From NCBI GenBank assembly GCA_002269645.1, contig NIVC01000363.1:496001-560000 (forward strand): a stretch of DNA of 64,000 nucleotides, read 5' to 3'. Under the pieces are notes generated by a model that saw only the letters and a list, made by a program, of their open reading frames with translations, was not told the DNA's origin and did not search any database. This DNA comes from Macrostomum lignano. Its lineage: Eukaryota. Position 1 is the first letter of the stretch; the number at the start of each line of letters is the position of its first letter. The translations under genes were made by a program, and so were the position numbers. Positions 2,123 to 7,545 of the stretch are shown piece by piece.

Positions 2123-2428
2123 CTACCAGCAGTACTCGTATCTACTCGAGTCCGGAGCCGTTCCCCGGCCGCAGGCTGCGTAGGCGCACTGGACGCAATC
2201 CGAGCACGCAGAATCCGAAACGTACTCCCCCTCATTAATTAGGCATCGGTATCTCCAAGTTCTGCACGATTTGGCCAGCTTTTCGGCGCCTTCGTCCGAC
2301 CGATCGGGACAATCGGATCGCGAGAAGCACTTGCTTGAGCAGTTCGCGCCGACGTAGGTAGAAGCGCAGACTAACCAAATTAGAACTAGCAGGCTGGACA
2401 GCAGTTTGCAATTAGATAGCCCCAACAT
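2123..2428 (-). CDS. Secreted Cys-rich peptide, paralog 1 (101 aa; ~28-aa signal peptide, 10-Cys mature region)
   Basis: True ATG at 2428, hydrophobic leader ending VGA, frame C-x3-C-x5-C-x14-C-x6-C-x12-C-x2-C-x2-C-x4-C-x13-C. Two clear paralogs nearby. Acceptor AG at 2433-2432; 5'UTR exon donor GTAAGT at 3031. Confidence 0.88.
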   Translation of the reverse strand: MLGLSNCKLLSSLLVLIWLVCASTYVGANCSSKCFSRSDCPDRSDEGAEKLAKSCRTWRYRCLINEGEYVSDSACSDCVQCAYAACGRGTAPDSSRYEYCW

Positions 2429-2517
2429 TTTCTGTAACGGTAATATTTTGCAAAAAAGACTTGGAACAGAACATACATAGACAACACAGACAATAGTCTT
2501 TCAAGCGTCTGCTGCTT

Positions 2518-2995
2518 CTATCCTGATGTGGTCTATCCTGATGTGGTCTATCCTGATGCGGTTTAGTCTGATGTGGTCTATCCTGATGCGGTTTAGTCTG
2601 ATGTGGTCTATCCTGATGTGGTCCTTTCTGATGTGGTCTATCCTGCATGGTGTGTTCTATTCTGATGTTGTCTATCCTGATGTGTTCTATCCTGATGTGG
2701 TCTATCCTGATGTGGTCTATCCTGATGTGTTCTATCCTGATGTGGTCTATCCTGATGTGGTCTATCCTGATGTGGTCTATCCTGATGTGTTCTATCCTGA
2801 TGTGGTCTATCCTGATGTGTCTATTTTGAAGCGGTCTACCCTGGTGTGATTTTTTCTGATGCAGTCTATCCTGATGTGGTCGATCCTGATGCGGTCGATC
2901 CTGATGCGGTCCATCCAGGTGTGGTCTATCCTGATGTGGTCGATCCTGATGCGGTCGATCCTGATGCGGTCTATCCAGGTGTGGTCTATCCTGAC
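2518..2995 (+). repeat. 15-bp minisatellite (TATCCTGATGTGGTC) in the 5'UTR intron of peptide paralog 1
   Basis: Direct tandem units; source of the spurious DRPHQ/IDHIR ORFs. Confidence 0.95.
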
Positions 2996-3126
2996 GTAGC
3001 ATCCCACAGCTCATGTATGCAACGCACTTACCAAACTTCGGATGGATGGCACTGATGCGCTGATGCGAGCACTCTAAATCTTAAAGCCACTACCGCACGT
3101 ACTCAAACTTGCAGTCTGCTATTGCG

Positions 3127-3224
3127 CTTTTAAATAGCAAATTTGAGCCAATTCAGTAATGACAGCAATGACAGCAATCAGTAATGACATCCGTTCCAAA
3201 ACTGACAGCTGTTGACAAGAGCTA
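3127..3224 (-). promoter_or_regulatory. Putative promoter of paralog 1: TATA-like box (3127-3137) and E-box/GATA-like motif (3204-3224)
   Basis: CTATTTAAAAG on minus strand upstream of the non-coding exon; GACAGCTGTTGACAAGAG is conserved at the same relative position in all three paralogs. Confidence 0.55.
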
Positions 3225-4905
3225 CGTCTTGCTGAAGGTGTGAGTGCCAAATAATTGAGTCAACCTTAGTGAAAATAATCTATTTAGTGAATGTAATATT
3301 ACTCCAAAGTTCGATCTCTAGTTTCTTTTTTAATAAAAGAATTAATTGCCTTTGACTCACGGTAGATTAGTTTTGAAGCTTAGTTTTTTTACTCTATGAT
3401 TAGATTTGATTTTTAGTATATGGATAGTCAGTGATGTCAGAGATGTCAAAATGACTGTGACTGGACCAGTCAAAAGTGTGAGAAGTGATAGCAGCTAATG
3501 AGGGATTCTGCAAAAGTGTCGGGACTATTGCTTGCCAAAAGTAAAAATTTTGTTGGATTAGGCTGAAACCAAGGACTACTTAACAACTGTTAACAACAGT
3601 TGTTAAGTAGTCCTTGGCTGAAACTTGCAACACAAGGACGACATAAGTAGTCCTTGTTGCAACATATGAACTATCAACTGTATTTTATTTCGCTGTACAT
3701 TTTCATAAAATTAGAACGCGTTTGCTTAAATTTATTAATGATTTGAAGTCACCTGGTCATGGTCACTAAACACGATAAATGATATGATATTATGATATCA
3801 CATGATATCACTAAACATGATAAAATGACGTTGAATCTCCTTAGACCAAACTACGAAGGATTTTTTGGTCAACTCATTTCGTCACTCGTACCTTCGAGTG
3901 GTGCGTCGAGGGCGGTGCAGAATGCTCAGGTGTTGCTTAAGCTAAGAGTCGAGTCTGAGTCAAATCACCCACCGACCCGAACCAAGCAACGGCGTTAACT
4001 CATCTTGCTTTACGCCATGGGTGTTGGGAGGATGCACTAGCAAATCGAAATTCATGGCCGAAAACATTCGTTGGTGCAGTCAAAGTGAGTCTTGAATGAC
4101 AATACAGTAATGCTTCATGAGCGAACGCGGTGGTTTGTGTCCAAGCTGCTATACGAGTAGAGAGACTTGAATGTTTAAAGATTCGCTCAATCAGCCGAAT
4201 GACGCGACGCACACTGGACTGCTGCGCGTTGCCTTCAAGATCGGCGACAAGCGAGTCACCAACGCGGCACTCTCACTGCACCAGACTGGTGCGTCCAAGC
4301 GTCTTCATCTGACAGTCATACTGGTGCAGGTGCTGCTGCTGAAGCTGCAGGCAGCCTACCGCGGCGAGGACAGGCGCGCACTCGGCTTTTCGTCGACTGC
4401 CTGTTGGCTGTCCTGAGAAAAGTCCTGTGACTCAGTTGTAGTGTCTAGGACCTCAGTGACAGCGCATTTTTTGGTTGCATTTTTATCTTTCTTTTCTGTA
4501 TGCTCCTATGATTCTCTGAAGAATTATTTAGCTCGTAGTGGAAGTGTCTTCTGCTAAGAATATTTCTACATAAAATAAATATGAGTTGCTACCGCTTGCT
4601 AATTAAAATGTAATAATAATTAAAAATGACAAAAATCTGTAAGCATTCTTCGGTAAATATCCAAGTGATGAATTAGTGTAAATACGCTCGTAATTGAACG
4701 TACGAGCTACATAAATCGTAGATGTGTGTTCAGCAAAAAAGTTCTTTTTTTCCAAAAGATTTTCTATTTTCTTGTCTTCAAACCAACTGCTTCGGTATTG
4801 TTTTAATTCACGCAAATATTAATATTGTTAACCCACACCGTCAGTCCAAATACAGTTTACAGTTTCATAAGCTTAACGCGGATTTCATCAAATACAAGTG
4901 CGCGT

Positions 4906-5551: not shown

Positions 5552-6633
5552 TACTTCTGCTAGGGAGGAATTCAAATCGCAGCAAACTTAGTGATCAGAA
5601 ATAGAGTTACAGTTCTCAATATACTAGCGAAAACATGGAATAATATTTTTAACTCCCAGAAAATTCCCAGCGACACTGAGTTCGACAAGTGTTCTACGGT
5701 CGTATGATGCATTTGTTACCATTGGAAATGACTTTCTATTTGAAAAGATGTAGGATATATGATCCTAGCTATTAAAAAGTATTTTTTTGTTTCTCATTTC
5801 TCTCAGTAAGATCACTCTCTGTCAATTCAGTCATGTTTTTTATCAAACTGTGCTGCAAGCAGGTCTGAACCAGTTTCCAGTAAACCAAAATCGGCTCCTT
5901 CTTGCAACCGTTGGTTTAAATCTATCAGAGAGAAGTGTAACAGTGTCTTGTCAATATGTACATAGGATTAAGCTTAATGCGGTCAATAATGCTTCCATAA
6001 TGCTTACAGCATTCAAATTTGGAGTAGCGCTGCTAAAACGGAAATGATAAAATACTCGTAGTATCAAAATAGCATCGCGTACAACAGAATTCGTATACTG
6101 TTTATCCGCTATTTTGTGCACGATTTATATTGATGATATGACGTATTGGCTACTGCAGTAAATAAAAACATAAACCTTATTAGCTTGCTTCATTGTTTTC
6201 AGTGATTAGCTACGAGCTACGTGCTGTCAATGCTAAAAACATAGTTTAAAATGGTGCACTTTAAAGCGCATCACACATTGCTTCAGGCTGCAAATACGAG
6301 TATGTCATTCTAGTATTACTTTTCGAATTGCGTTGCGAATGTAATTTTTTAATTATAAAGCACACAAATACATTGGCAGAAGAATTTAAAATTGCAACAC
6401 CGTCTCCACTTCGTGAATATTTATTTGAATCAGCCGTCATATTTTGTAACATACGACATTAAAGGTCAAAACACCAACACCGTTGTATGATTCCAACTTT
6501 CAAAAAGTTCACTTTATCTCTATTGATATACATCATGTGCATTTACATGCACACATGTTTTCGATCAATGCGACGTCAAAAAGCGTTCTATTTTGCCTGT
6601 TTGTAGTAATTACATATTTTAGCAATTGCATAT

Positions 6634-6933
6634 TTATTTGCAGTAGTCGCTGATAATTTTTTGCGGAGCATTTCCCCGATTGCAGGCTGTGTAGGCGCAC
6701 TGCACGCATTCAGCACAGCTGGAACGGTCAACCGGCTGTTCTTCAATAGTTTTGCAAGAATAATACCAACGCCAGCACGATTTGGCCAGTTTTAAAGCGC
6801 CATCGTCCGAAAACTCTGGACAATCGGAGCTAGTAAAGCATTTGCTGGTGCAGTCAGCTGAGACTGTTGTGGCGGTGCACAGGAGGCCCAGAAGCAGCAG
6901 GCTGTACACCAATTTGTTGATTGATGGCGACAT
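6634..6933 (-). CDS. Secreted Cys-rich peptide, paralog 3 (99 aa; 10 Cys)
   Basis: ATG at 6933, leader ending VSA, same Cys frame as paralog 1. Acceptor TTTCAG at 6937, donor GTGAGT at 7336 (400-nt 5'UTR intron). Confidence 0.88.
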   Translation of the reverse strand: MSPSINKLVYSLLLLGLLCTATTVSADCTSKCFTSSDCPEFSDDGALKLAKSCWRWYYSCKTIEEQPVDRSSCAECVQCAYTACNRGNAPQKIISDYCK

Positions 6934-7011
6934 TCTCTGAAACTTGGTAGTTAAACCATTAAAAGCCTAGAATAATTATCAGATTTATTTACAGCTAAAT
7001 GCTTTTCTGAA

Positions 7012-7200
7012 TCTTCTTCTGTGTATGTACTGGTTCTTCTGTCTGTACTGGTTCTTCTGTGTCTTGTATACTGGTTCTTCTATGTCTGTACTGTTTCTTC
7101 TGTGTCTTGTATACTGGTTCTTCTATGTCTGTACTGTTTCTTCTGTGTCTGTAATGGTTCTTCTGTGTCTGTACTGTTTCTTCTGTGTTTGTACTGTTGC
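7012..7200 (+). repeat. Degenerate ~20-bp minisatellite (CTGTACTGGTTCTTCTGTGT) in paralog 3 intron
   Basis: Tandem units visible; explains overlapping ORFs at 7021-7325. Confidence 0.85.
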
Positions 7201-7427
7201 TTCCGTATAATATCTGTAATTTGTACAGGATTGTACAAATAGAATCTCAGAATTGCACACCTCGAGTATTTGTAATTCTTCCAAAAAATGAGAAAAACCA
7301 ATTGTGAAGGCCAATAAAAACGCATTCTATACTCACCAAACTCGAGGGTTAGACAATTAATCTACGAAACTCGTTTCTAATGAAACCAAACAAAGAAGCC
7401 CGCACTGAATTTCAGCCGGGCAATTCG

Positions 7428-7545
7428 CTTATAAATAATATTGTAAACTCCAGTCAATTTTAATTAGCAAGATTAAACCAGAATCTGCTGAAGTGTTTCC
7501 AATCCAAAGCAAAATTTTCACGATTTTCACAGCTGCAGACAAGAG
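7428..7545 (-). promoter_or_regulatory. Putative promoter of paralog 3: TATA box (7428-7438) and CACAGCTGCAGACAAGAG (7528-7545)
   Basis: TATTTATAAG on minus strand; third copy of the conserved E-box motif ~90 nt upstream. Confidence 0.5.

What the first reader, a model, noticed from the sequence alone, without database searches (positions are those of the whole stretch)
2123..7545. Tandem cluster of three secreted 10-Cys-frame peptides of an unrecognised family
Seen: three same-strand genes with 26-28-aa signal peptides and 72-73-aa mature regions sharing C-x3-C-x5-C-x14-C-x6-C-x11/12-C-x2-C-x2-C-x4-C-x13-C and conserved CP(E/D)xSxxGA, CVQxAYxACxRGxAP motifs. Net charge is about 0 to -1 by manual count. 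Knowledge: the frame does not match defensin/CSab, macin, ShKT, Kunitz, saposin-like, insulin or CHH spacing as I recall them, and neutral charge argues against a classical cationic antimicrobial. Inference: a lineage-specific effector family (toxin, pheromone, seminal or mucus peptide), probably helical. Best candidate for an undescribed system here.
Basis: partly seen in the sequence, partly recalled or inferred. Interest (0 to 1): 0.85.

Follow-up and report, generated by a model that had tools for sequence, protein, structure and literature searches.

The report
Flatworm-only secreted cysteine-rich helical miniproteins
Three neighbouring genes of the flatworm Macrostomum lignano encode small secreted, disulfide-locked helical proteins from a family of at least six paralog types that has no detectable relatives elsewhere; their predicted fold matches no solved structure and their biological role is still unknown.

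Summary
Window 2123-6933 (minus strand) holds three intact paralogous ORFs of 101, 99 and 99 aa. Each has an N-terminal signal-peptide-like segment and a 72-73-aa cysteine-rich mature part. A and C have the stated 10-Cys frame. B has only 8 Cys; it lacks the 2nd and 8th.

The window is Macrostomum lignano contig NIVC01000363.1. The three genes are part of a five-gene same-strand tandem array that continues past the left window edge. A sixth member lies about 26 kb further on. The whole locus is present three times in the assembly, and all 15 ORFs are intact.

Paralog dN/dS is about 0.4 at dS of 0.85 or more. A splice-acceptor motif sits 3-4 nt before each ATG. B and C (not A) are called in the RNA-seq-derived GenBank annotation. 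These are real genes.

No relatives were found outside M. lignano among 5.8 and 1.84 billion proteins, and there is no Pfam hit. AlphaFold2 gives a very confident three-helix model (pLDDT 95.6) with no Foldseek match in PDB or BFVD.

UniProt labels some members "ShKT domain-containing". Pfam, profile comparison and fold search here do not support that.

Most likely these are gland-secreted extracellular binding miniproteins. Tissue and target are unknown.

The parts
2123..2428 (-). Gene A: 101-aa precursor. Signal-peptide-like segment is residues 1-28 (window 2345-2428). The mature part is 73 aa with 10 Cys (2126-2344). Stop codon at 2123-2125.
   Evidence: ORF. Frame, charge and the -3/-1 rule. 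AF2 model of the mature part has pLDDT 95.6. Identical or 1-aa-different copies occur in L001-L003. It is not called as a gene in the GenBank annotation.
4906..5205 (-). Gene B: 99-aa precursor. Signal-peptide-like segment is residues 1-27 (5125-5205). The mature part is 72 aa with only 8 Cys (4909-5124); it lacks the 2nd and 8th Cys of the A/C frame.
   Evidence: It is identical in all three locus copies with only synonymous differences. It is called as a gene in the RNA-seq-based annotation (method in PMC5730564).
6634..6933 (-). Gene C: 99-aa precursor. Signal-peptide-like segment is residues 1-26 (6856-6933). The mature part is 73 aa with 10 Cys (6637-6855).
   Evidence: It equals P0004. 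The variant in another locus copy is PAA64442.1 / BOX15_Mlig022385g1. It is a called gene.
2432..2437 (-). Splice-acceptor motif TTACAG, 3 nt upstream of the ATG of gene A.
   Evidence: It matches the M. lignano SL trans-splice acceptor motif [T/C]TNCAG (PMC8629364). Only 2.9% of all ATGs in the window have such a motif within 10 nt.
5210..5215 (-). Splice-acceptor motif TTTCAG, 4 nt upstream of the ATG of gene B.
6937..6942 (-). Splice-acceptor motif TTTCAG, 3 nt upstream of the ATG of gene C.
1947..1952 (-). AATAAA poly(A)-signal-like hexamer, 170 nt downstream of the stop codon of gene A (consensus match only).
4802..4807 (-). ATTAAA poly(A)-signal-like hexamer, 98 nt downstream of the stop codon of gene B (consensus match only).
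6420..6425 (-). AATAAA poly(A)-signal-like hexamer, 208 nt downstream of the stop codon of gene C (consensus match only).

Best explanation
The three ORFs are functional genes of a family restricted to Macrostomum as far as the databases show. The family has at least six paralog types: five in one same-strand tandem array (order C-B-A-D-E) and a sixth (F) about 26 kb away.

Shown:
- Each gene is one uninterrupted coding exon that begins 1-7 nt after a CAG. In A, B and C this is the full splice-acceptor motif, 3-4 nt before the ATG.
- Each product has a signal-peptide-like N-terminus and a 66-73-aa mature part with 10 Cys (8 in B).
- Net charge is about 0 to -1. There is no conserved dibasic, amidation or glycosylation site.

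Predicted with high confidence: the mature part folds as a compact bundle of three helices.

Inferred:
- The mRNA is made by splicing at the acceptor, either spliced-leader trans-splicing or cis-splicing from an upstream non-coding exon.
- The precursor enters the ER and the signal peptide is removed.
- Five disulfides (four in B) lock the helices. The joint loss of Cys2 and Cys8 in B suggests that these two pair with each other.
- The roughly 8-kDa miniprotein is exported by gland or epithelial cells as a single unprocessed domain.
- Because the Cys, Pro, Gly and aromatic scaffold is invariant while most other positions differ between paralogs (dN/dS about 0.4), the family most likely works as a rigid scaffold that presents a variable surface for binding an extracellular target. 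That makes it a ligand or effector, not an enzyme or a membrane-lytic peptide.

My best guess for the setting is a reproductive or other gland secretion that acts on a mating partner or on the animal's own surface or tract (about 0.3). Defence or microbe-binding comes next (about 0.2). The tissue and the target are not known.
For: Gene reality:
- All 15 ORFs are intact in the three locus copies.
- Paralog dN/dS is 0.36-0.47 at dS 0.85 to >2, and differences between locus copies are few.
- GC3 is 56-69% against flank GC of 34-44%.
- A CAG acceptor lies 1-7 nt before the ATG in all five paralog types. It matches the published SL-acceptor motif in A, B and C, against a 2.9% background (PMC8629364).
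- B, C, D, E and F are gene calls in an annotation built only from RNA-seq assemblies (PMC5730564).

Secretion: a hydrophobic N-terminus with small residues at -3/-1, modelled by AF2 as a separate low-confidence helix.

Fold: the AF2 mature model has pLDDT 95.6 and pTM 0.84, with helices at residues 17-38, 44-57 and 65-72.

No processing sites and neutral or acidic charge.

Lineage restriction and no known family.

Scaffold versus surface: the invariant columns are almost only Cys, Pro, Gly, Ala and Tyr.
Against: No tissue, peptide or functional data could be linked to any member. Seven supplement searches for the gene identifiers found nothing. No transcript contig carrying these ORFs is in the indexed assemblies.

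Gene A is not in the GenBank annotation, so its expression is unsupported.

The signal peptide was judged by simple rules, not SignalP.

In D, E and F the 'second' Cys sits at a different place (CPxxC), so connectivity may differ among paralogs.

The AF2 model rests on a 7-sequence alignment.

dN/dS of about 0.4 between old paralogs does not by itself show diversifying selection.
Confidence: 0.6

Rival explanations
1. They are divergent ShKT (ShK-toxin-like) domain proteins, as UniProt's automatic naming says. They would then act like other ShKT domains, for example as ion-channel blockers or as protein-interaction modules.
For: UniProt names three of the four named family members 'ShKT domain-containing protein'. 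The central six Cys (C-x14-C-x6-C-x12-C-x2-C-x2-C) loosely recall the ShKT order C-x6-C-x6/8-C-x12-C-x3-C-x2-C, with a Trp after the second of them (reading of the sequence; the ShKT consensus is from memory). Joint loss of an N-terminal Cys and the 8th Cys in B would fit a first-to-last disulfide as in ShKT.
Against: Pfam ShK (PF01549) gives no hit at E<=10 for any of eight sequences. It does hit all seven ShKT control sequences. hhalign of the family profile against nine validated ShKT domains gives probability 0.2-0.5%. ShKT-HMM scores of the real sequences are no better than those of shuffles that keep the Cys positions. Foldseek against PDB, which holds ShK, BgK-type, MMP23, BmK1 and AcK1 structures, returns none of them. 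The domain is twice as long, has 10 Cys, has CxxCxxC instead of CxxxCxxC, and is predicted as three long helices. One family member (E) is only 'Uncharacterized' in UniProt.
Confidence: 0.1
2. They are seminal-fluid or other reproductive-gland proteins, transferred or deposited at mating or egg laying, that act on the partner as allohormone-like ligands.
For: M. lignano has many prostate-limited transcripts: 76 by in situ hybridisation, and at least 64 of them are predicted to be secreted (PMC5977470). Reproduction-related genes evolve fast in this genus (PMC7336406 and PMC8662610, titles and abstracts). This family is secreted, tandemly duplicated, restricted to M. lignano in the databases, and has a fairly high dN/dS of about 0.4.
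Against: No link could be made between these genes and any published prostate, tail or social-plasticity transcript. The same sequence properties fit gut, epidermal, pharyngeal or adhesive-gland products.
Confidence: 0.25
3. They are defence or microbe-binding peptides of mucus, epidermis or gut.
For: Small, secreted, disulfide-rich, tandemly duplicated, lineage-specific and fairly fast-evolving proteins are typical of invertebrate immune effectors (general knowledge).
Against: Net charge is 0 to -1 and pI is 4.9-6.4. There is no amphipathic cationic face and no similarity to defensin, macin or saposin-like families by Pfam or Foldseek.
Confidence: 0.15
4. They are chance ORFs, pseudogenes or annotation artefacts in repeat-rich DNA.
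For: The window is dominated by micro- and minisatellites. Gene A abuts a 15-bp tandem array and is not annotated. No transcript contigs were found.
Against: All 15 ORFs are intact. Every Cys of each paralog type is kept across copies. dN/dS is well below 1 over saturated dS. There is a coding-type GC3 excess. Splice acceptors are conserved. The AF2 model is very confident. B, C, D, E and F are called from RNA-seq.
Confidence: 0.02

Closest known systems
ShKT domain (Pfam PF01549 ShK; PROSITE ShKT profile), e.g. ShK, BgK, MMP23 toxin domain, nematode BmK1/AcK1
   Same: Small, secreted, cysteine-rich and partly helical. Six of the ten Cys come in a loosely similar order. UniProt's automatic naming places several members here.
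   Different: It is about 72 aa against about 36, with 10 (or 8) Cys against 6, and CxxCxxC instead of CxxxCxxC. There is no Pfam hit. hhalign probability is <=0.5% and HMM scores equal those of Cys-fixed shuffles. No ShK-type structure appears among the Foldseek matches. Three long helices are predicted.
Crustacean hyperglycaemic hormone / ion-transport-peptide family and the venom peptides derived from it (comparison from memory)
   Same: Secreted, about 72 aa, all-helical and disulfide-locked single domains.
   Different: Those have 6 Cys with a different spacing and are made from prohormones with dibasic cleavage and often amidation. Here there is no Pfam hit to any family, no conserved processing site and no Foldseek match.
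Saposin-like proteins (SAPLIP; known in flatworms, e.g. the liver fluke Fasciola)
   Same: Helical secreted domains of about 75-80 aa held by disulfides.
   Different: Those have 6 Cys in a different frame and 4-5 helices. There is no Pfam SapB hit and no saposin-fold structure among the Foldseek matches.
Disulfide-locked helical water-borne pheromones (Euplotes Er pheromones, Aplysia attractin; comparison from memory)
   Same: The architecture is the same in principle: a small helical bundle rigidified by several disulfides, with a conserved scaffold, a variable surface and paralogous or allelic diversification.
   Different: There is no sequence or Foldseek similarity. Size, Cys number and taxon differ. 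No evidence for release into water or for any behavioural effect.
Macrostomum lignano prostate-limited putative seminal fluid proteins (Weber et al. 2018, PMC5977470)
   Same: Same species. Short, predicted secreted proteins.
   Different: No identifier or sequence link to that set could be established. The expression site of this family is unknown.

Membership tests
ShKT domain (PF01549 / PROSITE ShKT) | Significant match to the family profile | tested here: not met
   Pfam hmmscan at E<=10 gives no ShK hit for A, B, C, D, E, F or the mature A and C. All seven ShKT control sequences hit PF01549. hhalign probability is 0.2-0.5% against nine validated ShKT domains. HMM bit scores are -1.8 to 2.6, within the range of Cys-fixed shuffles. 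The PROSITE profile itself could not be run. UniProt's names imply that it matches some members.
ShKT domain (PF01549 / PROSITE ShKT) | Six Cys in about 35-37 aa ending in C-x3-C-x2-C | tested here: not met
   There are ten Cys (eight in B) in 66-73 aa. The corresponding stretch is C-x2-C-x2-C in all six paralog types.
ShKT domain (PF01549 / PROSITE ShKT) | ShK fold with 1-6, 2-4, 3-5 disulfides | tested here: inconclusive
   The confident AF2 model finds no ShK-type structure in PDB by Foldseek, although such entries are in the library. Foldseek is weak on very small domains, and the disulfide connectivity could not be read from the model.
Secreted cysteine-rich miniprotein (generic class) | N-terminal signal peptide with a cleavage site | tested here: met
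   The hydrophobic core has a 10-residue Kyte-Doolittle mean of 2.6-3.7, and small residues sit at -3/-1 (V-x-A, V-x-G) in all six types. SignalP was not available, so this is rule-based.
Secreted cysteine-rich miniprotein (generic class) | An even number of conserved Cys in a fixed frame across paralogs | tested here: met
   There are 10 Cys in A, C, D, E and F and 8 in B. Eight Cys columns are invariant across all six types.
   There are no Pfam hits apart from a sub-threshold signal-peptide-driven Nodulin_late match (E 0.016, 16 bits against a 30.4 cut-off) for C. No such structures are among the Foldseek PDB matches (best E 3.5, query-normalised TM-score <=0.45).
M. lignano seminal fluid protein candidates | Prostate-limited expression by in situ hybridisation | not testable with these tools
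   No expression data are available here. The identifiers are absent from all searched supplements.

The most novel reading that the evidence does not exclude
The family defines a previously undescribed disulfide-rich three-helix fold that arose within Macrostomum. Its tandemly diversifying members would be secreted signalling ligands, for example allohormone-like seminal or gland peptides that manipulate a mating partner. Paralog B would be a natural four-disulfide variant of the scaffold.
Probability: 0.15. Interest if true: 0.6.

Novelty: new variant of a known kind. Interest (0 to 1): 0.38.

Why it matters
If the prediction holds, this is a new compact disulfide-rich helical scaffold, useful to people who classify or engineer miniproteins. 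It is also a clean, experimentally tractable example of a lineage-restricted secreted gene family in a flatworm where transgenesis, RNAi and in situ hybridisation work. It comes with a natural variant (B) that has lost one disulfide. If the family proves to be reproductive, it would add a structurally defined family to the largely anonymous list of hermaphrodite seminal-fluid candidates.

On present evidence it is one more orphan cysteine-rich secreted family, of which invertebrate genomes hold many. It also shows that the automatic 'ShKT domain' label in UniProt for these entries is doubtful.

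Tried and rejected
- Pfam on all six paralog types and on mature peptides gave nothing, apart from a sub-threshold Nodulin_late hit driven by the signal peptide.
- PDB sequence searches with 3- and 9-sequence profiles gave only chance hits. These were FBXL17 (E 6e-4 for the whole sequence, but no stretch that passes on its own) and the GAL4/LAC9 Zn2Cys6 clusters (E 0.2-5, a similarity in Cys spacing in an intracellular DNA-binding motif).
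- Foldseek of the full-length and mature models against PDB, and of the mature model against BFVD, gave no match with E<0.8.
- The exhaustive HMMER search of 1.84 billion representatives with the A/B/C profile found only the family itself, paralog F, and P0006. P0006 is a 254-aa tandem-repeat ORF on a 2.4-kb metagenome contig that matches one helix motif (E 7e-4). I judged it a chance or low-complexity match.
- The word-indexed search with all six types found only M. lignano proteins.
It returned only sea-anemone and jellyfish toxins.
- The ShKT hypothesis was tested and not supported.
- I looked for expression data in full text and in the supplements of six papers for Mlig022385, Mlig003226, Mlig003746, Mlig033514 and BOX15. 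Nothing was found.
- Literature searches for ShKT or cysteine-rich families in Macrostomum and for a cell atlas found nothing relevant.
- I looked for transcript contigs that encode exactly A, B or D. Only the genome assembly was found for B and D, and nothing for A.
- Upstream regions of the paralogs do not align beyond the acceptor, so no shared promoter motif was found.
- An operon reading is unlikely. Intergenic gaps are 1.4-3.8 kb, above the 1-kb repeat-adjusted threshold used for M. lignano operons (PMC8629364). I did not subtract repeats.

Full report
**What is there**

The window region holds three minus-strand ORFs: A 2123-2428 (101 aa), B 4906-5205 (99 aa) and C 6634-6933 (99 aa). 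They are 54-60% identical to each other. tblastn with each against the whole window recovers only these three, at E 1e-21 to 1e-33.

Each starts with a hydrophobic 26-28-aa segment that ends in V-x-A. A 72-73-aa part follows, with net charge 0 to -1 and pI 5.2-6.4.

The 10-Cys frame is exact for A and C. B has only eight Cys: the second is Ile and the eighth is Ser. The stretch 6934-7545, which the finding includes, is non-coding and carries a 20/43-bp tandem repeat.

**Where it comes from, and the real extent of the family**

[quoted passage not shown] Window 1-7000 is identical, in reverse, to GenBank contig NIVC01000363.1.

The locus occurs three times in the assembly, on NIVC01000363, NIVC01000218 and NIVC01001750. 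This fits the known redundancy of that assembly (PMC5730564).

In each copy the array has five same-strand members in the order C-B-A-D-E. D (93 aa) starts only 290 nt beyond the left edge of the window. A sixth type, F (92 aa), lies about 26 kb further on, on the opposite strand of NIVC01001750.

D, E and F also have 10 Cys. Their 'second' Cys sits three residues after the invariant Cys-Pro instead of five before it, and the loop between helices 1 and 2 is six residues shorter.

**Are these real genes?**

- All 15 ORFs in the three locus copies are intact.
- Between paralog types, dS is 0.85 to saturated and dN/dS is 0.36-0.47. Between locus copies there are only 0-6 changes of either kind.
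- ORF GC3 is 56-69%, against 34-44% GC in the flanks.
- The upstream regions of the paralogs no longer align, yet every type keeps a CAG 1-7 nt before the ATG. In A, B and C it is TTACAG or TTTCAG, 3-4 nt upstream. This is the motif [T/C]TNCAG reported as the top motif at M. lignano spliced-leader acceptor sites (PMC8629364). Only 2.9% of all ATGs in the window have it that close.
- Poly(A)-signal-like hexamers follow each stop within 98-208 nt.
- The GenBank annotation of this assembly was derived only from RNA-seq assemblies (PMC5730564). B, C, D, E and F are called genes in it. A is not. A abuts a 478-bp array of a 15-bp repeat, and transcripts overlapping repeat annotations were filtered from that annotation. 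That might explain the omission, but expression of A is unsupported.

I conclude that these are expressed, constrained genes whose mRNAs are spliced just upstream of the start codon. Whether that splicing is trans or cis is not shown.

**Relatives and known families**

- A profile of A, B and C against 5.8 billion clustered proteins (word-indexed) found only M. lignano proteins.
- The same profile against 1.84 billion representatives, with no word index, also found only M. lignano proteins, plus one spurious repeat ORF from a metagenome.
- A profile of all six types again found only the family.
- Pfam has no match for any member.
- PDB sequence searches give chance hits only.
- Sensitivity caveat: the exhaustive search used the three-sequence profile, which did not even recover D and E. 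The collections also probably lack proteomes of other Macrostomum species. 'Restricted to M. lignano' therefore means 'not seen in any other sampled organism', not 'arose in this species'.

**Structure**

AlphaFold2 on a seven-sequence alignment gives a full-length model in which the mature part scores above 90 and the signal segment is a separate, low-confidence helix. The mature domain alone has pLDDT 95.6 and pTM 0.84, with helices at residues 17-38, 44-57 and 65-72.

Cys4 and Cys5 lie seven residues apart on helix 1. Cys6, 7 and 8 lie three apart on helix 2. Cys9 follows helix 2, and Cys10 ends helix 3.

Foldseek finds nothing in PDB (best E 3.5, query-normalised TM-score <=0.45) or in BFVD. 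The only sequence-based clue is the joint loss of Cys2 and Cys8 in B.

**The ShKT label**

UniProt names the C-, D- and F-type proteins 'ShKT domain-containing protein', and the E type 'Uncharacterized'. I tested this in four ways.

- Pfam ShK hits all seven ShKT control sequences but none of the family.
- hhalign of the family against nine ShKT domains gives probability 0.2-0.5%. Those nine were checked against PDB or Pfam.
- Scores against an HMM built from those nine ShKT domains are no better than for shuffles that keep the Cys in place.
- No ShK-type structure appears among the Foldseek matches.

The central six Cys do loosely recall the ShKT order, which probably explains the automatic label. 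Membership is not supported. A very distant derivation cannot be excluded.

**How it most likely works**

Shown: these are secreted-type precursors with no conserved dibasic, amidation or glycosylation sites, so the mature product is the whole ~8-kDa domain.

Predicted: a rigid three-helix bundle.

Inferred: it is locked by five disulfides, four in B. The invariant columns are almost only Cys, Pro, Gly, Ala and Tyr, while the remaining positions differ between paralogs. This is the pattern of a scaffold that presents a diversifying binding surface. Neutral to acidic charge argues against a cationic membrane-active peptide.

I therefore favour an extracellular ligand or effector from gland cells. 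The setting is unknown. A reproductive secretion is my first guess (about 0.3 within the main reading; 0.25 as a stand-alone rival), because this species has many secreted prostate products (PMC5977470) and the family evolves fairly fast. Defence is second.

**Novelty and score**

The proteins are already deposited as hypothetical proteins, and the general kind is common: an orphan, secreted, cysteine-rich family in a tandem array. What is new is the recognition of the family and its extent, the natural eight-Cys member, the confident helical model with no structural match, and the doubt about the ShKT label.

I rate it a new variant of a known kind, with interest about 0.38.

Noticed in passing
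window 2517-2994: A 15-bp tandem repeat (about 32 copies, unit TCTATCCTGATGTGG) lies directly upstream of gene A. It creates long spurious ORFs on both strands (for example 2412-3014, with 'HQDRP' and 'HIRID' repeats). It may explain why gene A is missing from the GenBank annotation, which filtered out transcripts overlapping repeat annotations.
   Followed up: partly
window 7014-7196: A 20/43-bp tandem repeat lies upstream of gene C. It is much longer in the sister locus L003, where its ORF artefacts reach 248 aa at L003 6304-7070.
   Followed up: no
window about 9700 onward, minus strand (L001 1-5538): The next gene upstream of the array encodes a multi-exon protein of about 888 aa with a PH domain (Pfam PF00169 in the precomputed annotation). 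It is conserved at the same position in all three locus copies.
   Followed up: no
window 15800-63700: About three quarters of the window is a patchwork of micro- and minisatellite arrays. Examples are (ACAG)n/(TGTC)n blocks of 0.5-0.9 kb, a 2-kb 19-mer array at 23588-25626, and 11-47-bp units. They produce extreme GC skew, up to +0.85 at 24-26 kb. Several arrays recur in the same order at 44.1-46.0 kb and 55.0-58.1 kb, which suggests a segmental duplication of about 11 kb.
   Followed up: no
L003 / L004 (NIVC01001750.1, about 53.7-110 kb): The family extends over at least 46 kb on this contig: C, B, A, D and E on one strand and F on the other. The 16 kb between L003 and L004 was not fetched and could hold more members.
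   Followed up: partly
L005 (JGI metagenome contig Ga0485328_0043793, 1434-2198): A 254-aa ORF made of five repeats containing 'GAIKYLTSQCITWYFRCL' resembles the helix-1 motif 'GAEYLAYMCKIWRYRCL' of gene B (E 7e-4). It is probably chance or low complexity. The origin of the contig is unknown.
   Followed up: partly
window 2426-2437, 5203-5215, 6931-6942: The M. lignano spliced leader ends in ATG (PMC8629364). If these genes are trans-spliced at the acceptors found, the leader's ATG would be in frame with the ORF for A and C (3-nt spacer) but out of frame for B (4-nt spacer).
   Followed up: no
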